From assembly GCF_000142905.1 (NCBI RefSeq), contig NW_013657635.1, forward strand, positions 251,966 to 310,545: a stretch of DNA of 58,580 nucleotides. Direction: 5' to 3'. Position 1 is the stretch's first letter. Every line of letters starts with the position of its first letter. This DNA is from Thecamonas trahens ATCC 50062. Lineage: Eukaryota; Protista; Apusomonadida. The position numbers were made by a program, and so were the translations under genes. Positions 4,030 to 58,580 of this stretch are shown here, in pieces. The notes under the pieces are model-generated. The model was not told where the DNA came from. It worked only from the letters and a program-made list of their open reading frames with translations, and ran no database searches.

Positions 4030-4894
4030 GACGTTAGCGCGGGTGGGGTGTGCGTAAGGTGAGATATTGCCTTGCCGCAGCCATAGGTCATCTGCAGTTG
4101 CAAAAGCTCTTCTTCCAAAGGGTTGGCGCTACCGGTGGGGCCGTGGAAGCGCAAGGAAGGGAAAGAGTGTCCTACACACTCCGAGGTACACAGGCGTGTG
4201 TATGCACAAGGAGGATTGGCTGATGAGGGTACAAGTTGTGACGTACATTCATGCCGATGTGGAGTCAAGTGTACGGTGTTCAGCTGTGACATTGAGCAAC
4301 GTTTGTTGGCCTTGCTGCCATTCGTGTGGGTTTGTACTTTGGAATTGGAGACAAAGTCGGTGGCCGGTTTGGCTGAGGAGCTGTGGAACATGCACCATAT
4401 CTAGCGAGGCATACATGCCATTGTGCTGCGTACGACATACTTGCAACAAACGTGTTATTGCAGCGCAGCCAGTACCATCCCAGAGCTCTGTGGATGTTCT
4501 CTGTACAGCGACCGGGCTGTGCGGGCCAACAGCGGCCCACAGTGAAAGAAAAATTGTGCTGATTGATCCACAACTTGCCGTTTGTGGAAAAACGTTTGGA
4601 CTCGCATATTGCGAGAAGGAGAGCAAGCGGTCACTAGCCGAACCGCAAGAGCGAGCCGCAGAACATGTGAGATCCAACCAGTTTACAGGCGTTAGTGTAG
4701 TTCTGTCTGAACTGTACCCGAGTCGTGGTTTACACGCACCATGTCGCCCGAAAAAAACTGGCGAGCTGGAAGCGGCACAAATGCCCGCCCGCCTTACCCG
4801 GTGAGCGGCGACTCCGGCTGGGCGACGGCCGCGGTCGGCGCCGGCCACCGTGCAAACGAGCGACAAACACCCCACCTTCCACCCGTCACACCCC

Positions 4895-5263
4895 ATGTCG
4901 CACGCCGACGTACATGAGCTTCTGACCGAGACCAACACTCGGTTTGCCACGCTTGCTTCTGCAGTGGCGCGCGACCCGCCCACGCCGGTCCAGCCGGGCT
5001 TCTATGCAGAGACAGCCGAGGACTTTCTCCTCGCGGCCAAGGCTATGGAGACCGCCTTCCGAGCCATTGCCCGCGAGTATGGCGCCCATGCTGCAGCTCC
5101 AACCGAGGATCCTGCCCAGGCTGCTCAGCAGAAGGCCCACGGACTCAGCGATCACCTTGCCGATGCGCTGCATGCTGTCGAAGGCTGGGACAGGGTTCTT
5201 GCCGACATCGAGAGCGATCTCGTTGCCGTCTTTGCCCAGGATGCCGCCATGCCTGATCTGTGA
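4895..5263 (+). CDS. MED28: Small helical protein, probable Mediator subunit 28 (MED28)-like
   Basis: ATG at 4895 after a C/A-rich tract. FLLAAKAMETAF and WDRVLADI resemble FLDIARQTECFF and WQQVLEDI of animal MED28 as recalled, with similar spacing and length. Confidence 0.55.
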   Translation: MSHADVHELLTETNTRFATLASAVARDPPTPVQPGFYAETAEDFLLAAKAMETAFRAIAREYGAHAAAPTEDPAQAAQQKAHGLSDHLADALHAVEGWDRVLADIESDLVAVFAQDAAMPDL

Positions 5264-5331
5264 CACTCTTGCCGTGGCCCTGCCCTGGTCGCCGTCCCAT
5301 GCTGTGCCTCCCACGCCCTACCGAGTCACGT

Positions 5332-8300
5332 TTATTCCCACGAGTCAGAGTCGAGGGAGGTGAACACGCCGGTGCTGTCACCCTCGCTCGACATGTCGTC
5401 GTCCGACGCTCCCAATGTCGACGACGAGTGCCACTCGGAACTCTCGTCCGAGACAAAAGTGCTTCCGGCGTCGAGGGCGAGCCCGATGCGGACGACCTCG
5501 TCGCTGGCGAGCACGACCTCGCACGGCTGCCGGACAGACATGTCGCTGGCAAACATGCCGCGCCCGCGGACCTCCTTGATCGTGAACGCGTTGTTTGCAA
5601 GCCGGAGCCGCTGCAGCCGCGGCGCAGACTCGAGCGCGCGTGCAAGCGCCCCGGCGCCCAACACACCCACCTGCGCGCGCTCGAGCTCTAGGACACAGAG
5701 CGCACCGGCGTTGTGCAGCTCGCTGGCGATGACCACTGCTCCGGCGTCGTCGACTTTGTTGCGGCTGAGCGAGAGGCGTGCCATCGCCGAGTGGCCCGCT
5801 CCGATCGCCTCCATCAGCGCCCGCACGCCCTCGGCGCCCGAAATCCGGTTTCCGCACAGCGAGAGCCGTGTCACCAGCGAGTTGTGCCGGAGGCCGCTGG
5901 CAAGCGCCACCAGGCCCTTGTTCTGCATCCCGGTCTTGGCCATCCGCAGCATCCGCACTGGCAGAGCGTTGTTTTCCAGCGCCCGCCCCACAACTCCGGC
6001 GCCGGTGTTGCCCAGCGGGTTGCCTGACAAGTCCAGATGTGTTAGGCTCGCGTTGCCGGCCCGGACCAGCGGCTCCAGCAGGAGCTTGGTGCCAGACGAC
6101 CCGACCTTGGCCCGCGACACATCCAAGAACTCGATCACGTTGTGCTTCTCCAGAGCCCGCCCGAGCTGGCTCGCACCCTTGGCGGCCAACACGTTGCCGC
6201 CGAGCACCAGCGTCGTGATCCGTGGGCACCCGCGCTCGATGGCGTCAGCCAGCTTGGTCACGCACTTGCGCCCGAGCCCGACCCCCAGCATGTCCACCCG
6301 TTCCAGCAGCGGCGAGTTGACCAGCAACGCCGCCATGGCATCCGAGCCCTGGGAGCAGAGCGTAGAGTTGCGGATACAGAGCTGCGTCACGCTGCCGGCA
6401 CGAGCCGCCTCGCCGGCCAGCGCTTTCAACGCCGCCTTGTAAATCGGCCCGCACCCACAAGCTCCACCTCCGCCACAGAGTGCATTCGCAGCTCGACTGC
6501 TGCCCGGAACACAATCGGATGCCAAGCATGGTCTCCCACAACCACCGCCGACAGCCCGTGGTACGTGAACCGGCACGCGTTGATGTCCATTGGGTACGAC
6601 GGCAGGTGCAGCGTGTGGAGGCTCGGACATCCGCGCAGGTCGAGCGAGACAAGACTGCCCGATCGCTCCAGCCCCGCCAGCGACTGCAGACTCTGCACAT
6701 GTGCCAGCACCGCGTGCTCCAGCGCGCCCATGCTCGCGAGCACAGCCCCGGGCGCCACCGCACCCTGGCTCCACGATACATCCAAAAGCCGCAGCCGTGC
6801 GCAACCACGCGCAATCGTCTCCAGCGCTGCGTCATCCAGCCCACGCGCCCGCCGCAGGTACAGCGACTCGAGCCGCGGTGCGAGCAGCGTCACGCACTGC
6901 AGCACAGAGCCGAGCTTGCTGGGCTTGACCTCCCGCCATGGCACCCGCCGCACCGCCTGCTCTTGCAGCCGCAGATCGAGCTGCTCGAACACTTCTGGCG
7001 AGCCCGAGCACATGCCCTCGATCGCGAGTGCAACCTGCTCCTCCACCTCGTACGCAGAGTACAGAACAGAGAGCCCGTACTCGGGCGTGCAGTGCTTGGC
7101 AAAGTATGCGCCAAGATCGGCCTCGCATCCACCCACTGTGCTCACGTACATCTTGGGATGTGCGCTCGCATCAATCCCGCGCCGTCTCAGGAACGCACGT
7201 TGGCCCTCGTCGAGAACCATGCCATCCGATGCCAGAACGTGTGTGTAGTGCTTGGCCACGATCTCATAGCGCTGCAGCGCGTCCATCTCGCTCACTTCGG
7301 TCACGCTCGCGTACACCTGCCCAAGCTCCGGGAACCGCTTGGCCAGCAGCTGTGCATGAGTCAGCGTTCCCGACGTGTTCTGCCGCAGTTCGCGCTGCAA
7401 CCACAAGTACCGCTCGTACACCTGCGCCACCACCGCTTCCGAAAGCACAAACGGAACGAGAATACCGTCGCCGCCGTCGTAGAGCGACTGCAGCTGCGGA
7501 AGGGTAAACGTCTCACGGTACGCAATGTTCTGGCGGATCATGCCTTCCAGCCATGCAGAGAGCACCTGCTCCGGCCGCCGCCGCATAAAGTCCTCCTGCG
7601 CCTCGGCGTCGATCGGCGACTGCAGCTCGTCCATGCAAGAAAACTGACATCATGTACGGGTCCGAGTCGGCCTCGCCAGCATCAGCCGGACTTACCGTGA
7701 GTTCGGCGAGTCGTCTCTGTATCCGTGACACCGCGTCGAGCGCGAGCCGCTCCGTCGCGGCCGTGCCGGCTCCACTCCCGTCGCTGCTTCCGCCCTTGCC
7801 ACCGTTCACGCTGCCGTGCGATTCTGAGCCGCGGAGCGCAAAGCCCGACCGCGACCGCCCACGCCCATGCAGTGGAATCCGCGGGCAAGCACCGAACCAC
7901 CCACTAAAGTCGGTTCCCACAACCAACTGGGTGTTGCGATCCCGTGTCGAAGCGCACGCCATGTAGTTCTCCGGTTCGACCACCGACGGCTCGAGCAGCA
8001 GGTGCATGAAGAGCTGCTCCGTGTACGCCGACTTGCGCCACCCAGCGTTGGTCAGGGGCCCGGCGCACTCGGCGAGCGCCTCCCGCAGCGGCCGCGCTTC
8101 GTGTCCAACGCCGACCAACTGCACCACAGAGCTTGTCTCCATCAATCGGCAATTGTACGCTTGCGAGGCGTCGCGACGAAAGGCAAGAAGCTCAAACAGG
8201 CCCGCGCCCGACCCGCCGCCAAAAAGTGCAGGAGCATGACGCTGTACTCAAGGCCAGGCTGCCGCGGTCCTACCTTGCACACGATGTGCTGCTGTGGCGT

Positions 8301-46994: not shown

Positions 46995-48460
46995 TTAGGA
47001 CGATTGGGTCTTGAGAGCATCGAGGAGGAGGACTTCGACGATGGCGAGGCGTTCAGCAAGGTCATCAGAGCGGGCGACTGAGGCTGCGAGGGCAGACTCG
47101 AGCTCAGTGACTCGGGCGGCAAGGGCAGGGTCGGAGGCGGCGGGAGAAGCGGCGGGTGCGGCTGGCGTGGTGGGCGAAGAGCTGGTCGCCGATGGAGCGG
47201 CAACAGGGGCGGGGGCAGAGGCGGCGGTAGAGTCGATGACGACGCCGGTGTGGTCAGAACCGACCTCGACGATGATAGCCGAGCCGAGGCTATCGAAAAA
47301 GTCAAGACGCTCGGGCTCCATGCGATCAAAGGTGTCGCCGTGGCCAGTCTCGCCATTGGCGGCCTCGCCCCAGGTGTAGACCTGGCCGTCGGCAGTGAGA
47401 CAGGCCGAGTGCTCGGGACCCATGGCAACGTGGACGACATGGACGTTAGCGAGCGCGGCGACCCGCTTTGGAACAGCCCAGTCGCGCTCGTAGTTGTAAC
47501 CGGCAACGCGAACGCGTGGGACGAGTGGTTCGGGATTGGTCTCGGTCCCGTGGCCAAGGTTGCCCATGCGGCCGTGACCCCACGAGTAGAGCGCGCCATC
47601 GTTGGTGACGGCGGCGCCCGAGCCTTCCGAGATGGAGACCTGAGTGACAGAGACGGAGGCGAGGCGGTCGACGCGGGTGAGGACGAGGCGAGGCTCCAGG
47701 TCGCCGAGACCGAGCTTTCCACACTCGTTGTCACCACAGGTGTAGAGAGAGCCGTCGGAGCAGACAACGGCGGTGCAGCGCATCCCGCATGAGACATCAA
47801 CGGCAATCTTGCCGTCAAGAGGAACAGGCGTCGGCTCGAGGATGGTCTCTGTGGTGCCGAGACCGAGCTGTCCAAAGCCGCCAAAGCCCCAGAGAAACAG
47901 TTGGCCGTCAGCAGTGACAGCACCCGAGTGGCCAGTGCCGGCCGAGACGTCAACAACGGTGGTACCGGTGAGGGCGGCGATCTTGCGCGGGACAAACTCG
48001 TCGTTCTCCGAGCCATGGCCAAGGATGCCGTAGTCACCGGTCCCGCACGACCACACATCGCCATCGGCATCAAGAATGAGCGTGTGCTCACAGCCCATCG
48101 AGACAGCGACAACGGTGACGCCCGCCAGCGCAGTGACTTCCTTGGGCGTGGACACGCTCTCGTGGCCACCGTGGCCGAGCTGGCCCGCATCGCCATCGCC
48201 CCAGGTAAACAGACGTCCATCGTCTGTCTTGCAGCAGCAGGCAGTGAGTAGCGAGGTGGCGTGCGTGCAGGAGGAAGTAGGGGAGAAGGAGGGAGTTCCG
48301 TACCGGTGACTGCGGCGCCGTAGCCGTCGCCGAGGGAGATGGAGACGAGGCGGGTGTGCGGCAGGTGGGCAACGTGGACAGGGAGCAGCTCGTTGCGGTC
48401 GTGGCCGAGACCGAGCTGGGCGCACTCGCCCGAGCCGAACGTGTAGAGGCCGTCGGTCAT
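46995..48460 (-). CDS. RCC1-repeat beta-propeller protein with short C-terminal coiled coil; exons 48304-48460 and 46995-48223
   Basis: About seven RCC1 repeats (LYTFGSGECAQLGLG, LFTWGDGDAGQLGHG, VWSCGTGDYGILGHG...). Removing the intron joins AAVT to DDGRLFTW. Confidence 0.92.
48224..48303 (-). other. Spliceosomal intron (80 nt, phase 1) in the RCC1-repeat gene
   Basis: GTACGG donor at 48303, pyrimidine-rich body, candidate branch site TACTCAC, ACAG acceptor at 48224; restores the reading frame. Confidence 0.85.
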
Positions 48461-48463
48461 GAT

Positions 48464-48494
<31 letters not shown>

Positions 48495-49284
48495 CGGTTG
48501 AGGGGTGTGGGGTGTGGGTGGGTGGGAGGGGTGTGTGGTGGAGTGGCCGTTGTGTCGCTGGTTTGGGCCGATGATGAGGCTGAGACTGCTGCGAGCCCGG
48601 AAAGCTGTCATCACCGTCTCGATCGGGTGTGGACAACAGCCACAATGATCCGGCCAGTACATCACGATCGCGTCAGAGTCGTCAAAGGTCTCCACGGCCC
48701 AGAAAAAAAGCGATCATGTCTTCCTATGCACGCCCTCAACGTGTGTGGCGGATGTCCGACAGCTGCTCATTTGCTCGCCCCTCACACGTCGGCGTTGACA
48801 GTGGTTTGGCAGATGACGAGATAGTTGGCAAAGAAACAGACCTGGACGTTGGCTTCTCTCGAATGACGGTGATCTAGCTAGCTCCGACTTGTTGCCATTG
48901 AGTGACGAGAGCTATCGTGGAGTCCAGCAGTCGCCAATGGCATCGAAGGCAGTCTCTGCCCTGGCGTTGAGGCGCGCGGGGTTGACCCGAGCGAGGACGT
49001 GAGCGAGATCCTCCAGCGAACGACGTAGGGGCCGAGCCTCATGCCCAAATACCGGGCGATTGTGGTCGAAGAAGTGGTCGAAGGAAAGGGCTATCGTCAG
49101 CATGATCACCACCAATCGCAGCTGTTGGATGTCAATGGCCGGCGACGACTCGGCGGAGACGTTCGGTAGATTCGACGGCACACGTTCGGACAATAGAAAC
49201 AACCTGTGCGACACGGCGAAACGGAGAAGCAGCGGAGGGCACCAGCTCTCTCAAGTCTAGCAGGTGGAAAGGGCAAACGTAACC

Positions 49285-52200
49285 ATGTCCTCCGAGCGTG
49301 TGTACACACGGGAGGATGTGGAGAGGATGACGGAGGTACTGAACAAGGCCAGGAAGGAGTACTTTGCCATGTCGCTGAGGGAGAAGACCGGCGGAGTGGT
49401 GAAAAGGGAAAGCGGAAGAAAATCGTGAAGAAGCTCGAACGGATCGCCATGCAGGTGAAGGACGAGTTGTTCAAGGTGTCGGAAGCTATTGGTGCTGGCC
49501 GAGCTGTTCGGGACGTGGTTGAGGCTTGGATCTCGATGGGTCGGACTGCGGTGGTGGTGCTCCGGGATACGCTGGAGGGGGAGGGCGGAGAGGCCGGAGT
49601 GGCGAGGAGGGAGTGGTGGTGGGCAGCAAGGAATTGTGCTGCGCTGCTGAAGCGTGTGGATGACTACGCTGGGGCGAAGGAGATGGTCTGCAGTGCAGTG
49701 GAGGCGCCCAATGTCCCGGACATGGCTACTGCTGCTCTTCTGGAAATCTTGGCGGGTGTGTACCAGGCTCAGGACAAGCTGGATGAGGCTGAGGCGACAT
49801 ACAAGTGGGCGCTGGACATCAGGCAGGCCAAGCTGGGACCGGATGCACTGGACGTGGCGGCCACGCTTAACAACCTGGCGGGTGTGTACAAGGCACAGGA
49901 CAAGCTGGATGAGGCTGAGGCGACGTACATGCGGGCGCTGGACATCACGCAGGCCAAGCTGGGACCGGATGCACTGGACGTGGCGACCACGCTCAACAAC
50001 CTGGCGGGTGTGTACCAGGCGCAGGACAAGCTGGATGAGGCTGAGGCGACGTACATGCGGGCGCTGGACATCTGGCAGGCCAAGCTGGTACCGGATGCAC
50101 TGTACGTGGCGGGTACGCTCAACAACCTGGCGGGTGTGTACAAGGCACAGGACAAGCTGGATGAGGCCGAGGCGACGTACATGCGGGCGCTGGACATCAG
50201 GCAGGCCAAGCTGGGACCGGATACACTGGACGTGGAGGGTACGCTCAACAACCTGGCGGGTGTGTACAAGGCGCAGGACAAGCTGGATGAGGCCGAGGCG
50301 ACGTACATGCGGGCGCTGGACATCACGCAGGCCAAGCTGGGACCGGATGCACTGGACGTGGCGACCACGCTCAACAACCTGGCGGGTGTGTACGAGGCGC
50401 AGGACAAGCTGGATGAGGCTGAGGCGACGTACATGCGGGCGCTGGACATCACGCAGGCCAAGCTGGGACCGGATGCACTGTACGTGGCAACCACGCTCAA
50501 CAACCTGGCGGGTGTGTACGAGGCGCAGGACAAGCTGGATGAGGCTGAGGCGACGTACATGCGGGCGCTGGACATCAGGCAGGCCAAGCTGGGACCGGAT
50601 GCACTGTACGTGGCGGCCACGCTCAACAACCTGGCGGGTGTGTACAAGGCGCAGGACAAGCTGGATGAGGCCGAGGCGACGTACATGCGGGCGCTGGACA
50701 TCAGGCAGGCCAAGCTGGGACCGGATGCACTGTACGTGGCGGGTACGCTCAACAACCTGGCGGGTGTGTACCAGGCGCAGGACAAGCTGGATGAGGCTGA
50801 GGCGACGTACATGCGGGCGCTGGACATCAGGCAGGCCAAGCTGGGACCGGATGCACTGGACGTGTCGACCACGCTCAACAACCTGGCGGGTGTGTACCAG
50901 GCGCAGGACAGCTGGATGAGGCTGAGGCGACGTACATGCGGGCGCTGGACATCAGGCAGGCCAAGCNNNNNNNNNNNNNNNNNNNNNNNNNNNNNNNNNN
51001 NNNNNNNNNNNNNNNNNNNNNNNNNNNNNNNNNNNNNNNNNNNNNNNNNNNNNNNNNNNNNNNNNNNNNNNNNNNNNNNNNNNNNNNNNNNNNNNNNNNN
51101 NNNNNNNNNNNNNNNNNNNNNNNNNNNNNNNNNNNNNNNNNNNNNNNNNNNNNNNNNNNNNNNNNNNNNNNNNNNNNNNNNNNNNNNNNNNNNNNNNNNN
51201 NNNNNNNNNNNNNNNNNNNNNNNNNNNNNNNNNNNNNNNNNNNNNNCACGCTCAACAACCTGGCGGGTGTGTACCAGGCGCAGGACAAGCTGGATGAGGC
51301 TGAGGCGACGTACATGCGGGCGCTGGACATCAGGCAGGCCAAGCTGGGACCGGATGCACTGGACGTGGCGACCACGCTCAACAACCTGGCGGGTGTGTAC
51401 CAGGCGCAGGACAAGCTGGATGAGGCTGAGGCGACGTACATGCGGGCGCTGGACATCAGGCAGGCCAAGCTGGGACCGGATGCACTGTACGTGGCGGGTA
51501 CGCTCAACAACCTGGCGGGCGTGTACAAGGCGCAGGACAAGCTGGATGAGGCCGAGGCGACGTACATGCGGGCGCTGGACATCACGCAGGCCAAGCTGGG
51601 ACCGGATGCACTGTACGTGGCGGGTACGCTCAACAACCTGGCGGGTGTGTACAAGGCGCAGGACAAGCTGGATGAGGCTGAGGCGACGTACATGCGGGCG
51701 CTGGACATCACGCAGGCCAAGCTGGGACCGGATGCACTGTACGTGGCGGCCACGCTCAACAACCTGGCGGGTGTGTACAAGGCGCAGGACAAGCTGGATG
51801 AGGCCGAGGCGACGTACATGCGGGCGCTGGACATTCATATGTCGTTATCGCGCGGTAGCTTTTCCACAAGCTTCTTCCTTGCCCGTCTTCTGCACCTTGC
51901 TCTTCCCTCCTGCAACAGCAACCTCCACACTACCCGAGGTTATGCCCTTACCTTTCTTGACATCAACATCAACCTTCTTGCCACTCACGGCCGCGACCTT
52001 GCCACCTTTGACGCCATCGCCTTTGCACAAACCTGCGCTCTGATCGCCACTCACTTTGCTTGCGACCCCGACGTCATGGCGAAGCTCTGTGAAGCCATTT
52101 CTGTTCTCTCCTCTGTCGATGCGCTCCTGCCGTCAGCCATCCACATGCTTAACGCCATGCTCCCGGCCACAGACGACGACGCGGAAATCCACGCTTCGCT

Positions 52201-55200
52201 CGCCGCCTGCCACCGCCGTCTCACGCCGCCCAACTGGATTCACGCCCTTGCTCACGCTGCAGCCGCTGCCGACGACAGACTCTTCCAAACCTTGCTTGAC
52301 GACTATGTTGATACATACTGGATGGTTGACGACGATTTGCTGGCACAGTTTCACCATGCAGTCGCCACCTACCATACTCACATCATCGGCACGCTCGTCT
52401 CTGATCACAATACCTGGAACTCGCCTTCACTCGCCGTCTCTGAGTTTGCTCGCAACCGCATTCTCAACACCTTTGTCCGGCTCAACTCGATCCACGACCA
52501 GATGTTCTCCCGCTGCATTGCTGCTGCCACCGATGGCCACACTTCTGAGGCTTACTTTCCGGCCGACAAGGGTTCTCGCCTGGCACTCGCTGAGTCACTC
52601 AGATTGGCGGTGCACATTCCTACTCTCAGGGCCAGTGACTTTGATGGTGCCGGCTGGGCTTGCGATCTCCTCGCCGAGCTGGTTGATTCGACCGAGTCGG
52701 TCAAGGCTGGACCACAGAGTATGACCTCGATGGGCGATGTCACCAGCTGGCTTTCGACCACGAGTCCCGACACAGACCCAAGTTGTGCGGGGCGCTTGTT
52801 TGGTACACTCAAGAAGCTGGCGCGGACTGTTCTACCCCGAGACGAGATCCCAGTCGACGTCTGCGTTGTTGACGCATTAATTGATGACGGCTACCTCGCT
52901 GTTGCTCTTGGCCGGCATTTCACCGCCACGCGGAAAGCTCGTCTGGTTGATCGAGACGGGTTTGGCGCAAGACTCGCTACAGCTGTCGACGCTGCATTGG
53001 ACAATCGTGCAGGAGACATTGCACCGTCCACTGTCCTCGCGCCGGCGTTTCTGGCGGAGCTAGAGAGCCTTGACTGGGTCAAGTCTGACAACAATCAGTT
53101 CAAGCTGAAGGTGCCCGCCTCGGTCATCAGTGATGCGGCGCTCGACTTCCTTCCGCCACACGTTGCTGCTGTTGCTGCTGAGTGGATTCGCCTTCACGCC
53201 ACGACGCGGGCAGCTCGTCCGACGTATTCTGCGTCCTCCAACAACGGCGTGTCTGGGCGTCAGATGCTGGAGCTCCTGCGCGCACGCGCTGATGCGATAG
53301 AGGATCCCTGTGATGGGTCGGGTGTGTTCCTCGCTGCTCGCGCACCAGGTGCGCCGTCACCGTACGATGCTGCAACGTTTGGCGACCAGGGGGCGGCGTA
53401 CCTTGACAAGATCACAGCTCCGACGTTTGACTCTGCTGCGCCGGACGCGTTTCGTGCACTGGTGGACGCGATGGACTTTTCCCACTATCGCAAGCCTGAT
53501 GGCAGCTCGACCGACTCGGCCGAGTGGGAGACGGCTTGGGCCGGCTCGACCATCTGGATCGCCAACGACGCCAAGCATGTCCGGCTGACGCCAACGAGCA
53601 AGTCAAGTCGGCTGACTCGGAAGGTGGGCGCGCTAATTATGGCGGGCGCTTCGGTCGAGATTGACATGGTGGCGCGGCGGTCAGTGTATTTTTGGACATT
53701 CGCGGTGCTGCTGCGCGACGACGGGTTTGTGGGCAATGCTGTGGAGCTCTCCGGTCAGATCTACGGCGCGCTCCTCAGTTCTGGGCACATTGACAAGCGC
53801 CGTATTGTGGAGCCTGCAGCTGTCCAATACCGGAAGCACGTGGCCAACATCAACCCTGAGGCTGCCGCGGCATCTGCCCAACAGTATCGCGCGTCGCTTG
53901 AGACAATGCTGCAAAGCAGGGCAGCTGCAGCTGTACCGCATGTCAATGTTCTTACTGATTTCCTGCTGCGCAAGGTCCTACAGGAGTCACACGTGCGGCT
54001 AGACCCGGATGCACGTGAGGACGCGCTGGATCTTCTGCGCCGCGCGTTTGGGGGAACAACGACGCTACTCACAACGTTTGGGTGGGCACAGGCCGACATT
54101 GGTGGCGCAGACAGTGTCACCCGCAAGGCCGAGCTGCGTGCGGCGGCCGAGGCAGCTGCACGGCACGACCTGCGTCTGGTGCTCCCGGTGGCATCTGATA
54201 TCCAACCTGAGCTCCAGAGCGGCTCGATGCGGGAGTGGCTAGCTTGGGCATGCAAGGCATGGCGCTCCGGCGCAGAGGGCAAGGGTCTGGTGCGGGCTTC
54301 GCTCGGTCAGCTGGACAGCGCGCCGACGTGGCTCAGAGCCTGGGTGGCGGACAAGGCGCGACAGATGTACTGGGATGGCAACGAAATGGATGCTTTGCAC
54401 GAAAGTGTCGCCGGGAAACTGGCTGCTGCCCATCCTCCAGGGGATCTGGACCGCGACATTCACTCGCAGCTGATGTACGCCGCGATGTTGCTTGCCCGTA
54501 CGAAGCAATGTCAGGCTATGCTTGTGGCGACAAACATATCACCAGAGCTGCGGGAGCGGCTGGAGGCAGAGGCACAGACTCGATCGGTAGAGCTGCTCAT
54601 CAAGGTGCGATCGATTGCAGAGCACTCGCTGCTGCGCGCATTCGAGCCGCACATTCTCAAGCCGAACTACGAGAATGTGATCGGCAGCGAGAAGGACACA
54701 CACGACATCAAGTACTCACCTGTCTCGTCAGAAGCGAGTTGGAACAGGTGGCTCGTTGCGTCCAGGTTGCGCTTTGCTGGCGACACGCCGGCTGATGCAG
54801 TCACCATCGATGACAATTCACTGGCGAATGTGTACCGCGAGCTGCTGAACCATATGCGGCGGCTGATGCCCCTTGAACTCGCAGGTGGGAACCCGGCTGA
54901 CGAGTGGCTGTTCTTTGCGGCGCTGGTGTCGAACCAGGCCAAGCACGAGAACGTGGTGGGCATTGTCAAGGCTGTTGGTGATGACCTCATGCTTCAGGCT
55001 ACTCCGCGCGAGATTGGGCGGCTGTCGTTTGTGCTCAATGGCTCTGCTGCCACCAAAGAGGCTAGTGCGGCGATGTTCAACCAGATGCAAGAGGATGGCC
55101 TGATCTCGAGGAAAGGCGAGCCGATGGTCGACAGCGTACCGCCTGCTCTGACGGGATCGCCTGAGGGCCAAATGCTTGAGGCCGTGCTGGCGCGGCGCGC

Positions 55201-55624
55201 GCACCGGCCACCGGCACACGGCCCGGCGTTCGGGCGCCCTCTGGTAGCTCTGCTGCGTGCTGCTGTGGCCGGTGCCGATGCGCTGGCGCGCACCTGCTTT
55301 GCAGTTCATCGGGACTACTTTACGCTACCGCGACCTGTGGCTGGAATGCCCGCGCTGTCGGATGAGTGGACCCTGCATCCCAAGCAGCTGTCCCCGTACA
55401 TGGCCGAGTACAAGTTCGAGCTTAGTGGTGGTAAGGACGTGACTCAGCTGAGGGCCGCGGCGCGTAGGCTCCGGAAAACCCGGCCGCGATTCTCCGAAGT
55501 CGAACTCAGGGTCGTGGATGGCACGTTTGCTCGGCTTCTTGTGCAGTCGACAACGTTTGGGCTACTGCAAGACCTGTACGACGAGCTGGAATCTTGTATT
55601 GATGCCGCCGGGGCGTCGTCGTGA
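49285..55624 (+). CDS. Large protein with ~17 near-identical 42-aa TPR repeats (kinesin-light-chain/TPR_12 type) and a ~1250-aa C-terminal region with two HEPN-like modules
   Basis: Likely start MSSERVYTREDVERM at 49285, joined by a one-base break at ~49409 to KRKKIVKKLERIAMQ (alternative start 49449). Repeats LNNLAGVYxAQDKLDEAEATYMRALDIxQAKLGPDALxVAxT; open frame to TGA at 55624. Spans an N gap and a one-base loss at ~50910. Confidence 0.85.
49737..51835 (+). repeat. 126-bp coding tandem repeat array (TPR)
   Basis: 10 units before the gap and 5 after. The 280-nt gap equals 2x126 plus the 28 nt needed to finish the interrupted unit. Confidence 0.95.
50967..51246. other. Assembly gap (N) inside the TPR array
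   Basis: 280 Ns. Confidence 0.99.
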
Positions 55625-55680
55625 CGCTAGCCATAAAACGCGCTCAGGAGGGTCTCAGCGGCATCAAGACGACACCAGGT

Positions 55681-56531
55681 CAACAACTTGGGCCTCAGGT
55701 GGCAGAACTCGGATTCCGGAAAGTGGGTCTGTGGAAACGATAATGTGCAAAAGTCAGTGTGTGCATGTAGTTGGGTAGTAGTGAAATCAGATTGGGTATA
55801 GCTGGTCATGAGTGTAATGGGGCGTGTGCGGGGTCGAGCGGTCGAGGGCGTGCTCAAGCACCCAGGCCAAACAAGTCGCCGCTCAAGTGAGCCGAGGAAG
55901 ATAGGAATGGATGACGCCGAAACTGGAACTGATGATAGTGCACAGGGAGTGATGACCTCGAGTGTAATCGTGAGTTGTGTAGCTGGTAGTGGGAAGGAGC
56001 TAGGTGGTGGTGAAGGTGGGCTGATCGGGCGAGCGTGCGACGGCTGGCGGCTGGTGGTCGACAAGGCAGGGGACAGCTGAGGGGGCTGGGTCGGAACGGG
56101 GTGGATCGAGATTGGTATTGATTGGAGAATGAAAAGTCTGGCATGTGATGGTTGACGGATGGCAGTGTCGGGGTCGGGGATGAGAATGGGGGTGAGCTGG
56201 AGCGGGGAGACGAGGAGGATGAGGAGGAAGAGGAAGCCGGGTGCGCGATGAGATGGTGGTGGGCATGGCCAAGGCATGGGGGTGGAGGTTGTGGCTGGGA
56301 TGTGCAGGATGGTGGTGGAGTAGGGGGTCAGGGTGGTGGTTGGTGGTGATGGGGCGTAATGAGTATGGTAGGGGGGAATGACGGGGGTCGTGAAGTGGGT
56401 GGCGTGCCAGGCGGAAGGATGATGGGTATGGCGATTGGGCTTGAGGATTGATGTGGGTGAGTATGATACGGCTGATGGCTGTGTGTTGAGTGTGGGCGAT
56501 GAGGGAGCCGGGTACTTGGGCGGCGAGGGGG
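55681..56531. repeat. Copy 1 of a diverged ~850-bp direct repeat
   Basis: Shares collinear blocks (aactcggattccggaa, gtagtagtgaaatcagattgg, gagccgaggaagat, gggaaggagct..gtgaaggtgggct, gggtatggcgattgggcttgag) with 57128-57980. Confidence 0.85.
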
Positions 56532-57127
56532 AGGAGGGCGGGATGGATTGGGTTGAGATGGACGTCGATGGAGACGAGAGCTTGGGATTGGAAGAGGAGG
56601 CAGACCACTGAACGCTAGCCCGCCACTGCATTGAAAATCGCTCGCCCTTGCCCTCTCTTGTTCTTCCTCGTCCTGGCCAGCCCGGTGGTCTCGTCGTCTA
56701 GCTTGGTGATCGGCGGCAGGGGCGGCTGGTGATGAGCAGGCCGGCGGGGGCTGTGATGGGCAAGGCCGGAGGAGGGAGGGGAGGATTGGGTTGGAGAGCA
56801 GACTAGTAGTCATTGCTAATGATCTGGCTATCCGTATGCATAGCCTCCGATGCTCCGTCGATGGCTAGCCTGCTCTCGGTGGTGCCGGAGGTGGTCGGTC
56901 GGCGGCGGGCGGTGGTCGGCGGCGAGCAGCAGGCGGTCGGCAGCGATGCTGTTGACGGGTTGGCGTCGGCTGATGTGCGTATCGGGGCAAATGAAGTCGA
57001 TGGATATAATTGCAGGGATGATGGGTAAGTCTGGTCTGGATGTGGTGATTGTGGGTGGAGATGATAGGGAGTGGGGGTCGGAGATGGGCCCGGGAGGGGG
57101 GTCAGCAACTTCGAAGGGACACAGGGC

Positions 57128-57980
57128 CAACAAGTTGGGCCTGAGCCGGCGAAACTCGGATTCCGGAATACTGCAGCTATGGATTGGAGACTGTGCAAGG
57201 GGTAGTGTGGGCATGTAGTAGAGTAGTAGTGAAATCAGATTGGCCATATCTTGCAATGAGGTTGGTGGGGGGCATGTGCGGGGTCGGACGGTCGAGGACG
57301 TGCTCAACCGCCTAGGCAAAACAAGCCGACGCGGAAATGAGCCGAGGAAGATGGGTGTCGATGACAGCGATATTTGTACGGGTGATAGTGTGAGGTGAGT
57401 GATGACCAGTAGTGTGGTCGCGGGTTGTGTAGCTGGCAGTGGGAAGGAGCTGGGTGGCGGTGAAGGTGGGCTCATCGGGCGAGCGGGCGGCGGCTGGTGG
57501 CTGGTGGTCGGCGAGGCCGGGGCAGCAGAGGGGGCTGGGTCGTGGCTGGGTGGATCGAGATTGCTGTTGGTTGGACGATGCGCAGTCTGGCTTGTGATGG
57601 TTGACAAAATGGCGGTGTCGAGGTCGCGGACGAGGATGGGGTGAGTTGGAGCGCGGAGAGGACGACGATGAGGAGGAAGAGGAAGCCGAGTGCGCGGCGA
57701 GATGGTGGAGGGCATGACCATGACCTGTGGGTGGTGGTTGTGGCTAGGATGATAGTGATGGTAGTGGGGCAGGGGTTGGGGGTGGTGGTTGGTGGTGATT
57801 GGGCGTAATGAGTATGGTAGGGGAGGATGAGGGGGTCGTGACGTCGGTGACGGGACGGGCGAAGGGGTGGTGGGTATGGCGATTGGGCTTGAGCATTGAT
57901 AAAGGTGAGTATGATACGGCTGATGGGGGTCTGTGGGGTGTGGGCGAAAGGGGCGGCGGGTACTTGGCCGGCAGAGGGAA
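57128..57980. repeat. Copy 2 of a diverged ~850-bp direct repeat
   Basis: Collinear with 55681-56531 at an offset of ~1447 bp, with many substitutions and small indels. Confidence 0.85.
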
Positions 57981-58580
57981 GGCGGCGGACGTTAATTGAG
58001 TTGAACGTTGAATTAATTGAAGAAATGCCGGAACCAGCATCAAACGAGGCAATGACGTCCACAACAACAACCAAAGATCATACATGGCTTGCACAGCACA
58101 CGTATGAGTAAGCCAACAGGGACTGGACAAAGCTAGCAGGCAATGGGATGAACTCGGGTGACGTTCAGGTCGATGAAAGAAAGAACGCGGTTAATCGATC
58201 AGATCTGCAGATTCAACCATGACCCAGGACACAAACAGGGGTCAACACAAAATATATTGCATGCACAACTATTGACCATGGCCAACGACAACAAAGTTGA
58301 GAATCGATAGTGTAGTGAGCAAGGCCCGATGGTGAATGTGGAAGTCAAGGTCGATCAAAACAGGGAAGTCAAGAACAATTGAGGCATGACGAAAAATGAT
58401 ACAAAGCAACAAGAAGAACAAAGGCAATGATCGATGACGATGCATGTCAATTGTGGTCAACCATCAAAGGCAAAAGCAACCAAAGCAGAACATGAAGGCC
58501 GACAAAAGCAACAACAAAGCATGTGTCTTCTCCATACGGCAAAGAGCAAGGAACATGGATAGCCAACAAGAAAAAAAACA

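What the first reader, a model, noticed from the sequence alone, without database searches (positions are those of the whole stretch)
49285..55624. Candidate eukaryotic sensor-RNase: variable TPR array fused to tandem HEPN-like modules
Seen: a near-clonal TPR array joined to a long unique C-terminus with two repeats of a HEPN-like signature, and no NACHT/NB-ARC P-loop visible. Known: highly conserved, shuffling TPR/WD/ANK arrays are the recognition modules of fungal NLR/HET non-self receptors, and paired HEPN domains form composite RNase sites (Cas13, Csm6, RNase L/Ire1 KEN). Inference: one polypeptide couples a diversifiable ligand-binding solenoid directly to an intramolecular HEPN pair, which would be an undescribed innate-immune or cell-death effector in a protist.
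Basis: partly seen in the sequence, partly recalled or inferred. Interest (0 to 1): 0.82.

Follow-up and report, generated by a model that had tools for sequence, protein, structure and literature searches.

The report
TPR array fused to duplicated K-H domain
The last gene on a Thecamonas trahens chromosome arm joins a near-identical, hypervariable TPR repeat array to two copies of an undescribed helical domain that looks like a HEPN RNase fold but lacks its key arginine; the same design occurs in scattered bacteria.

Summary
The window is Thecamonas trahens ATCC 50062. The stretch is annotated as one 1927-aa 'TPR repeat protein'.

Confirmed:
- About 17 TPR_12/TPR_10 units of 126 nt, 95-97% alike, vary mainly at four codons.
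- A unique 1.2-kb-codon C-terminus follows in frame.
- There is no NTPase domain.

The 280-N gap equals 28 + 2x126 nt, so register and frame are kept. The only break is one missing A near 50910.

It occurs at chance frequency, and both His are unconserved in relatives.

The C-terminus does hold a real tandem duplication (hhalign E 1e-20 to 4.5e-26). The duplicated unit is a ~300-aa domain with no Pfam, NCBIfam, PADLOC or PDB sequence match. It has an invariant Asn-x-x-Lys-His at the end of a helix.

Twenty-five distant relatives exist. Most are bacterial, and 16 of 22 carry N-terminal TPRs, so the fusion is genuine.

Verdict: partly supported; a new variant of the repeat-sensor plus HEPN-like effector design.

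The parts
49449..49736 (+). Annotated start (ATG 49449) and short helical N-terminal cap before the repeats; no other domain
   Evidence: P0001 begins MQVKDELFKV; Pfam finds only TPR-type matches here
49737..50966 (+). TPR units 1-10 (42 aa, 126 nt each). Unit 1 is degenerate. Unit 10 carries a 1-nt deletion at about 50910 that shifts the frame.
50967..51246 (.). Assembly gap of 280 N. This equals the 28 nt that finish unit 10 plus two whole units, so repeat register and frame are kept if the size is right.
51247..51834 (+). TPR units 13-17; the last ends after helix B (…YMRALDI)
51835..52282 (+). Linker between the array and unit 1. It is in frame, C-rich, and partly helical in the model. It is poorly conserved.
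52283..54145 (+). Unit 1 of the duplicated domain (q70-690). It holds helix 1 'VDDDL' and helix 2 (52316-52603), a poorly conserved insert (about 52604-53470), then helix 3, beta elements and the closing helix (the well-conserved 'B' block, 53405-54145).
   Evidence: phmmer hits to 25 relatives; alignments A2 and A3; hhalign against unit 2; pLDDT 70-96 over q450-690
53564..53578 (+). Motif N-D-A-K-H of unit 1 (K500 at 53573-53575, H501 at 53576-53578). K and H are invariant in 18 of 18 sequences. The residue at the HEPN-Arg position is Ala.
54188..54442 (+). TPR-like helical hairpins between the two units (q705-789)
   Evidence: VIA matches to KLC TPR, CSN and HAT repeats over model residues 705-789
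54443..55345 (+). Unit 2 of the duplicated domain (q790-1090), compact. It runs helix 1 'LDRDIHSQL', helix 2 '…ELLIKVRSIAEHSLLR', helix 3 with SNQAKH, a beta-hairpin, and the closing helix '…LLRAAVAGADALARTCFAVHRDYF'.
54932..54946 (+). Motif N-Q-A-K-H of unit 2 (K956 at 54941-54943, H957 at 54944-54946). K and H are invariant in 14 of 14 sequences. Ser sits at the HEPN-Arg position.
55346..55624 (+). C-terminal tail and stop codon (55622-55624)
55655..58579 (.). Subtelomeric repeat starting 30 nt after the stop. The gene is therefore the most distal gene of this contig end.

Best explanation
This is a single gene at the subtelomere of Thecamonas trahens.

Shown:
- It encodes an N-terminal array of about 17 near-identical 42-residue TPRs. 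Variation is confined to a few codons.
- A short helical linker follows, then two tandem copies of an undescribed ~300-residue domain.
- Each copy has a long helical hairpin with conserved D-x-D…S-Q and K-x-R-x-L-D-Q…R, and a variable insert.
- A third helix then ends in an invariant N-x-x-K-H, followed by a beta-hairpin and a closing helix.
- The same TPR-plus-double-domain design occurs in rare bacterial proteins and in two other eukaryotic assemblies.

Inferred:
- The TPR array is the recognition part.
- The two domains are HEPN-derived four-helix bundles that pack against each other. They would then form one composite site from two K-H pairs, as the two HEPN domains of Cas13 do.
- Ligand binding by the TPRs would switch on cleavage of RNA (or binding of a nucleotide or RNA), without any STAND NTPase.
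For: - One ORF runs from the TPRs to the stop codon, and the public model treats it as one gene.
- The repeats and their hypervariable codons are documented.
- There are 25 distant relatives at E <= 1e-3 among 1.84 billion representatives, colinear over four blocks.
- 16 of 22 relatives have TPRs N-terminal of the blocks.
- The duplication is supported by hhalign: 99.3% / E 1e-20 for helices 1-2, E 8e-11 for helix 3 with K-H, E 3.8e-11 for the tails, and E 4.5e-26 for whole units.
- K-H is invariant in both units, and D/Q/R positions are conserved in helices 1-2.
- The topology matches the published HEPN description. [quoted passage not shown] Csx1 also has a beta-hairpin right after the motif (PMC3710099; model secondary structure).
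- The bacterial homologues are single genes. Several lie next to toxin-antitoxin pairs, a relaxase, IS elements, Fic or Abi_2.
Against: - The defining HEPN arginine is absent in every member. The residue five before His is A/S/N/G/Q/T.
- No Pfam HEPN model, NCBIfam, PADLOC or PDB sequence profile matches any of the 18 members.
- hhalign against 23 HepT sequences is not significant (E 0.09-0.39).
- The model is only moderately confident (mean pLDDT 56), and the K-H loop of unit 1 is below 50.
- Foldseek found nothing.
- Pairing of the two units, enzymatic activity and any immune role are untested.
- Unit 1 of Thecamonas has lost two helix-2 residues that are conserved elsewhere (E131N, R137N).
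- The 1-nt frameshift could be real.
Confidence: 0.42

Rival explanations
1. The duplicated domain is a non-catalytic helical scaffold or ligand-binding module unrelated to HEPN. Four-helix bundles are a common arrangement. In this reading the invariant K-H and the other polar residues bind a partner, a phosphate-bearing ligand or a nucleic acid rather than cleave RNA.
For: - There is no sequence link to any HEPN family.
- The Arg is absent.
- PMC3710099 notes that HEPN-like domains lacking the motif are probably non-catalytic binders.
Against: - About a dozen polar positions are conserved in both copies across bacteria and eukaryotes (D-x-D, S-Q, E, K, R, D-Q, R, N, K-H). This is more typical of an active site than of a scaffold.
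- HEPN chains are strongly over-represented among the top hits, and independently for both units.
- The motif sits where the HEPN motif sits, at the end of helix 3.
Confidence: 0.3
2. The locus is a decaying relic. In this reading a horizontally exchanged gene stranded at the subtelomere has been inactivated by the 1-nt deletion in TPR unit 10 and is no longer functional in Thecamonas.
For: - There is a frameshift near 50910.
- The gene lies 30 nt from the genome-wide subtelomeric repeat.
- A truncated 205-nt copy of the TPR unit with an in-frame TAG sits at another chromosome end.
- There is no paralogue of the C-terminus.
- Two conserved helix-2 residues have been lost in unit 1.
- The Coxiellaceae copy is itself fragmented.
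Against: - 4.4 kb after the gap and 1.5 kb before it are free of stops. Chance survival of 1182 codons is about e^-38 at this GC content.
- The codon-position GC pattern is that of coding sequence.
- All invariant residues are kept.
- The single indel lies 56 nt from a gap edge, where base calls are least reliable.
Confidence: 0.15
3. These are two genes wrongly joined. In this reading a TPR gene and a separate gene starting at an internal ATG (for example 52076) only share an open frame by chance across the C-rich 240-nt stretch 51835-52075.
For: - The array ends abruptly in mid-unit.
- GC skew flips at about 51850 and GC3 drops from 0.87 to 0.62-0.67.
- 80 stop-free codons have roughly a 10% chance at this composition.
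- The closest relatives, P0002 and P0004, were called without TPRs.
Against: - There is no stop codon for the TPR frame before 55622.
- 16 of 22 relatives have TPRs fused N-terminally with a comparable 100-200-aa linker, in bacteria where there are no introns.
- The array ends after helix B, which is a normal place to end.
- P0002 and P0004 come from prokaryote-style gene calls on eukaryotic assemblies.
Confidence: 0.07
4. One reading: two canonical HEPN domains whose catalytic R-x4-H motifs are RLNSIH (52478) and RSIAEH (54608).
For: Both strings fit R-x4-H and lie in the homologous helix 2 of the two units.
Against: - The motif count equals the chance expectation (8 against 8.2).
- The two His align to Leu (10 of 14) and Gln (12 of 15) in relatives, and Arg135 aligns to Lys.
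- The motif lies in helix 2, not at the end of helix 3 where HEPN has it.
Confidence: 0.03

Closest known systems
HEPN superfamily (Anantharaman et al. 2013, PMC3710099). This includes the families already known to be fused to TPRs: C6orf70/DUF4209, LA2681, DZIP3 and Swt1/Abi2 with STAND-TPR.
   Same: - A predicted two-hairpin four-helix core.
- A variable insert between helices 2 and 3.
- A conserved acidic residue in helix 2.
- A conserved Asn-x3-His at the end of helix 3.
- A beta-hairpin after the motif, as in Csx1.
- Fusion to TPR arrays.
- Occurrence in mobile or defence-like bacterial neighbourhoods.
   Different: - The arginine of R-x4-6-H is absent in all members, and an invariant Lys precedes the His instead.
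- About 100 residues (a hairpin plus helices) lie between helix 3 and helix 4.
- There is no match to any Pfam HEPN model.
Cas13 (two HEPN domains in one polypeptide) and RNase L / Ire1 (repeat or sensor domain plus KEN/HEPN RNase); from my own knowledge
   Same: The design principle is shared: two HEPN-type modules that could build one composite site, or a repeat-type sensor that directly gates an RNase without a STAND NTPase.
   Different: There is no sequence relationship. There is no crRNA-binding part, no kinase-like domain, and no evidence of activity. The sensor here is a TPR array.
Fungal NLR/HET-type receptors with highly conserved, site-hypervariable TPR/ANK/WD repeats, and the Podospora 42-residue 'nearly identical TPR-like repeats' (PDB 4y6c/4y6w)
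   Same: - 42-residue TPR_10/TPR_12 units that are 95-97% identical at the DNA level.
- Substitutions concentrated at four codons.
- 4y6c and 4y6w were recovered by the searches.
   Different: - There is no NACHT/NB-ARC domain.
- The repeats are N-terminal, not C-terminal.
- The partner domain is unknown in fungi.
- Thecamonas has separate NLR-like TPR genes of the usual orientation.
Bacterial TPR_12 'tetratricopeptide repeat proteins' P0003, P0005, P0007-P0009 and P0012-P0017 (metagenomic; a gammaproteobacterial MAG and Coxiellaceae SSA3)
   Same: They are true homologues, with N-terminal TPRs followed by the same duplicated domain. The motifs NDSKHIRLTPQ and SNxxKH are invariant.
   Different: Identity is 22-30%. 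The TPRs are not near-identical. The Thecamonas, P0002 and P0004 sequences form their own well-supported split (100/99) and share an extra C-terminal 'C-F-x-x-H-R-x-h-F-x-L-P' helix end.

Membership tests
TPR (Pfam TPR_12 / TPR_10 class) | Repeated helix-turn-helix units that match the Pfam models above their gathering scores | tested here: met
   TPR_12 scores 289 bits (cut-off 30.1) and TPR_10 scores 264 bits (cut-off 27.5)
Hypervariable near-identical repeat arrays (fungal NLR/HET type) | Very high unit-to-unit identity, with substitutions concentrated at a few codons | tested here: met
   95-97% matches; codons 10, 29, 39 and 42 each have 2-3 residues while the rest is nearly invariant
NLR / STAND receptors | A central NACHT/NB-ARC/AAA_16 P-loop NTPase | tested here: not met
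   No NTPase family appears in any part of the ORF. The upstream neighbour is an RCC1-repeat gene on the other strand.
HEPN superfamily | A four-helix up-down bundle made of two alpha-hairpins | tested here: inconclusive
HEPN superfamily | [quoted passage not shown] | tested here: met
   Unit 1 has an insert of about 290 residues and unit 2 one of about 75 residues at that place. hhalign skips it.
HEPN superfamily | An R-x4-6-H motif at the end of helix 3 | tested here: not met
   [quoted passage not shown] The Arg position is A/S/N/G/Q/T in 18 of 18 sequences for unit 1 and 14 of 14 for unit 2. Lys precedes His.
HEPN superfamily | A conserved acidic residue in helix 2 | tested here: met
   At D141, 12 of 14 have D and 2 have E. 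At position 849, 11 of 15 have D and 3 have E.
HEPN superfamily | Detectable sequence or profile similarity to a described HEPN family | tested here: not met
   No HEPN model matches any of the 18 members in Pfam. Nothing was found with PDB profiles. hhalign against HepT gives E 0.09-0.39.
HEPN superfamily | Metal-independent RNase activity from a composite site formed by two HEPN domains | not testable with these tools
   Needs biochemistry. The complex prediction gave no verdict.

The most novel reading that the evidence does not exclude
The duplicated domain is a new HEPN-derived nuclease family in which a Lys-His pair has replaced the Arg…His dyad. Two copies in one chain would form a Cas13-like composite site gated directly by a diversifying TPR sensor, with no NTPase. 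This immune-type module has moved between bacteria (including protist-associated Coxiellaceae-type lineages) and protists.
Probability: 0.22. Interest if true: 0.75.

Novelty: new variant of a known kind. Interest (0 to 1): 0.55.

Why it matters
If the K-H domain is an active HEPN-type nuclease, it adds a family with a different catalytic dyad. It also adds an NTPase-free 'repeat sensor directly gating a paired nuclease' design that bacteria and a deep-branching relative of opisthokonts share. That bears on how immune modules moved between prokaryotes and eukaryotes.

Even if the domain is not catalytic, the work defines a conserved protein family of about 25 known members that no database has named. 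It also gives precise residues to mutate: K500/H501 and K956/H957.

For the assembly, the result shows that the gap sits in register inside a collapsed repeat array. It also shows that the public gene model hides a 1-nt frameshift with an artificial intron.

Tried and rejected
- Word-based protein search with the C-terminus found only the protein itself.
- With alignment A1 the same search was swamped by TPR proteins, because N-terminal TPR columns were included. With the TPR-free A2 it again found only the protein itself.
- ESM Atlas feature searches of the whole C-terminus and of unit 2 gave no usable hit. The 'atlas' fold library was not available.
- Single-sequence AlphaFold of q1-541 was useless, with pLDDT 40.
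- Foldseek against PDB returned only generic large helical proteins, with best E 0.04.
- PDB sequence profiles found nothing beyond residual TPR-like matches.
- NCBIfam and PADLOC found nothing.
- BLASTP of the first half of the C-terminus against the second half was not significant (E 0.17). Only profile-profile comparison showed the duplication.
- hhalign of unit profiles against 23 HepT (PF01934) sequences was not significant.
- The search for related loci with A1 failed for lack of conserved columns.
- Complex prediction of unit 1 with unit 2 gave no verdict. The score was 0.00, the alignments were not used and the fold was uncertain. It is not evidence either way.
- Literature searches for Thecamonas plus HEPN and for the two assembly accessions found nothing.
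- A composition check for foreign origin was uninformative. GC3 of the C-terminus (0.67) is at the low end of, but within, the range of neighbouring genes (0.66-0.88).
Full report
Identity and gene model. A word-based search of the C-terminal 1182 residues (window 52076-55621, called q below) returned one protein. It is P0001, 1927 aa, 'TPR repeat protein [Thecamonas trahens ATCC 50062]'. Its sequence starts at ATG 49449 and runs through the repeats. It skips the region around the gap with an artificial intron ('…TTLNNLAG|DKLDEAEATY…') and ends at the stop 55622-55624. The window is contig C45:251966-310545 of a 28.7-Mb assembly, and the window end is the contig end.

The gap and the frame, tested first. 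The sequence on both sides of the 280 N is the same 126-nt repeat. The left edge stops after the first base of unit codon 33, and the right edge begins with the last base of codon 42. The missing sequence must therefore be 28 + n x 126 nt. The written 280 equals 28 + 2 x 126, so 50871 + 3 x 126 - 1 = 51248, which is the observed start of the next unit. With the stated length, register and reading frame are kept, and the ORF listing reads straight through from 50936 to 55624. Whether the true sequence is continuous cannot be shown here. The only frame break is one missing A (GAC AAG CTG in all other units, GAC AG CTG at 50907-50913), 56 nt before the gap edge. It may be a base-calling error next to a collapsed repeat, or it may be a real lesion.

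The TPR array. Tandem Repeats Finder reports 9.7 and 4.7 copies at 95% and 97% matches. Pfam gives TPR_12 (7.6e-88), TPR_10 (8.2e-81) and no NTPase. Across 14 readable units the substitutions sit mainly at codons 10 (Q/K/E), 29 (R/T/W), 39 (D/Y) and 42 (A/T/G). A few synonymous differences occur elsewhere. It is the pattern known from fungal NLR/HET repeats (my own knowledge) and from the Podospora 42-residue repeats 4y6c/4y6w, which the searches recovered. With the two hidden units the array would have about 17 units. In the rest of the genome the same unit occurs only as a 205-nt fragment. That fragment is 92% identical, contains a TAG, and abuts the subtelomeric repeat at the end of contig C16. 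Other TPR_12 genes are only 30-37% identical. They have the usual NLR-like order, with SLFN_AlbA_2, AAA_16 or DUF4062 first and the TPRs last.

In the 1262 residues after the array, R-x4-6-H occurs 8 times against 8.2 +/- 2.7 in shuffles. The two R-x4-H strings that lie in homologous places are RLNSIH (52478-52495) and RSIAEH (54608-54625). Both sit in helix 2 of the two units. In relatives their His is Leu (10 of 14) and Gln (12 of 15). The signature as described is therefore chance plus lineage-specific substitution.

What the C-terminus is. Pfam, NCBIfam and PADLOC find nothing. There is no paralogue in the genome. The codon-position GC pattern is that of coding sequence, and 1182 stop-free codons cannot be chance. 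An exhaustive phmmer search of 1.84 billion representatives found 25 relatives (E 6e-25 to 9e-4). They are colinear over four blocks: q81-175, q444-680, q790-960 and q1058-1087. None of the 18 aligned members has any Pfam domain in this region. Sixteen of 22 relatives carry TPR_12-type arrays N-terminal of the blocks. The TPR-plus-C-terminus fusion is therefore an old, conserved architecture and not an annotation accident.

Context of the relatives. The genomic contexts are bacterial. The relatives are single genes next to RelE and Gp49/HTH_37 toxin-antitoxin pairs, a MobA/TraI relaxase, IS elements, Fic and Abi_2, or next to housekeeping genes. Among 185,579 species genomes the strict motif was found in only two: a gammaproteobacterial MAG and Coxiellaceae bacterium SSA3. 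In SSA3 the gene is fragmented. A profile search hit 4 of 401 genomes of that class. The two closest relatives (P0002 and P0004, 35-36% identity) come from large eukaryote-type assemblies. For P0002 the neighbours are Ank, C2 and RasGAP genes; no informative neighbours were recorded for P0004. In a tree of the best block they form a 100/99 split with Thecamonas against 21 other rows. The Thecamonas branch is long and its composition is deviant. No root, and hence no direction of transfer, can be claimed.

Internal duplication. BLASTP of the two halves was not significant, but profile-profile comparison is clear. Helices 1-2 of the two units align at 99.3% probability, E 1e-20. The helix that carries K-H aligns at E 8e-11. 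The tails (beta elements to the closing helix) align at E 3.8e-11. Whole units align at E 4.5e-26. Each unit reads as follows:
- [ILV]-D-x-D-[IL]-x-S-Q (helix 1);
- N-x-x-x-E-L-I-I-K-[IL]-R-x-L-L-D-Q-x-x-x-R (helix 2);
- P-N…Y-F-P;
- a variable insert, about 290 aa in unit 1 and about 75 aa in unit 2;
- W-x-x-x-W-L…[x/S]-N-x-x-K-H (helix 3);
- beta strands;
- …L-L-R-x-A-x-x-G-x-x-x-L (closing helix).

W488, K500, H501 and L504 are invariant. K-H is present in 18 of 18 sequences for unit 1 and 14 of 14 for unit 2. The residue five before His is never Arg or Lys.

Comparison with the HEPN definition. [quoted passage not shown] Csx1 adds a beta-hairpin right after the motif. The unit fits this topology feature by feature, and Asn-x3-His keeps the usual R-N-x-x-x-H spacing. 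The arginine itself is missing, and no sequence method links the family to HEPN. hhalign against 23 HepT sequences gives E 0.09-0.39, although the best local path for unit 2 does place S-N-x-a-K-H on R-N-i-l-v-H. I therefore do not file it as a HEPN member. I rate 'HEPN-derived' at a little under even odds. Residues q705-789 between the units look like TPR-type hairpins.

Mechanism.
- Shown: one frame; a conserved architecture; a duplicated domain with an enzyme-like set of conserved polar residues in both copies; no NTPase.
- Inferred: the TPR array recognises a ligand, and the two units pack into a pseudo-dimer whose two K-H pairs, with the helix-2 Asp/Arg, form a nuclease or nucleotide-binding site that is switched by the TPRs.

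The attempt to test pairing gave no verdict and counts for nothing. They are weighed in their own sections.

Location. The stop codon is 30 nt from a 2-3-kb element (55655-58579). That element has more than 80 copies, nearly all within 3 kb of contig ends. The C16 copy is followed by TAGGGT/TAGG repeats. The gene is thus the most distal gene of a chromosome arm. Such a place favours repeat turnover and explains the collapsed assembly.

Verdict. The object is a member of an unnamed, mostly bacterial family: a TPR array plus a tandem 'K-H' domain. That domain is plausibly, but not demonstrably, HEPN-derived. Nothing in this work required a referred step.

Noticed in passing
window 55655-58579; L009 (C16:531000-538444) 4855-6897 and 7265-7445: The G/T-skewed tail after the gene is the genome's general subtelomeric repeat. 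It has more than 80 matches at 80-90% identity, almost all within 3 kb of contig ends. On C16 it is followed by (TAGGGT)n and (TAGG)n, which look like telomere repeats.
   Followed up: yes
L009 4661-4865 (G000:C16:535660-535864): A 205-nt fragment (1.6 units) of the same TPR repeat, 92% identical and with an in-frame TAG, lies directly against the subtelomeric repeat of another chromosome end. It may be a remnant of ectopic exchange between chromosome ends.
   Followed up: partly
window 49285-49431: A 47-codon ORF (MSSERVYTREDVERM…) starts at a good-looking ATG 164 nt upstream of the annotated start, but in another frame. It is either an upstream ORF or a second homopolymer-type frameshift in A-rich sequence that hides a longer N-terminus.
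   Followed up: partly
L060 3126-8000 (-), L061 720-4754 (+), L063 3803-7903 (-): Thecamonas has other long intron-free TPR_12/TPR_10 genes with NLR-like order. They have Schlafen AlbA_2, AAA_16 (STAND-type ATPase) or DUF4062 at the front and the TPRs at the C-terminus.
   Followed up: partly
L023/L024/L026 (G001, Coxiellaceae bacterium SSA3, C1:1796964-1798668): The Coxiellaceae homologue is split into open frames of 222, 224 and 289 aa, which looks like a pseudogene.
   Followed up: no
L012 (P0003) and P0006, P0012, P0015, P0019: In several bacterial members the second unit is as complete as the first (helices 1-2 followed at once by the NDSKH block). This shows the ancestral unit without the large insert.
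   Followed up: partly
L010 1-636 and L018 675-3164: Two bacterial homologues have a second large TPR_12-rich gene next to them, which suggests local expansion of TPR sensors.
   Followed up: no
window 46995-48695 (-): The upstream neighbour, divergently oriented, is an RCC1-repeat protein. A (CA)n/(GT)n microsatellite lies near 48470-48500 in the intergenic region.
   Followed up: no
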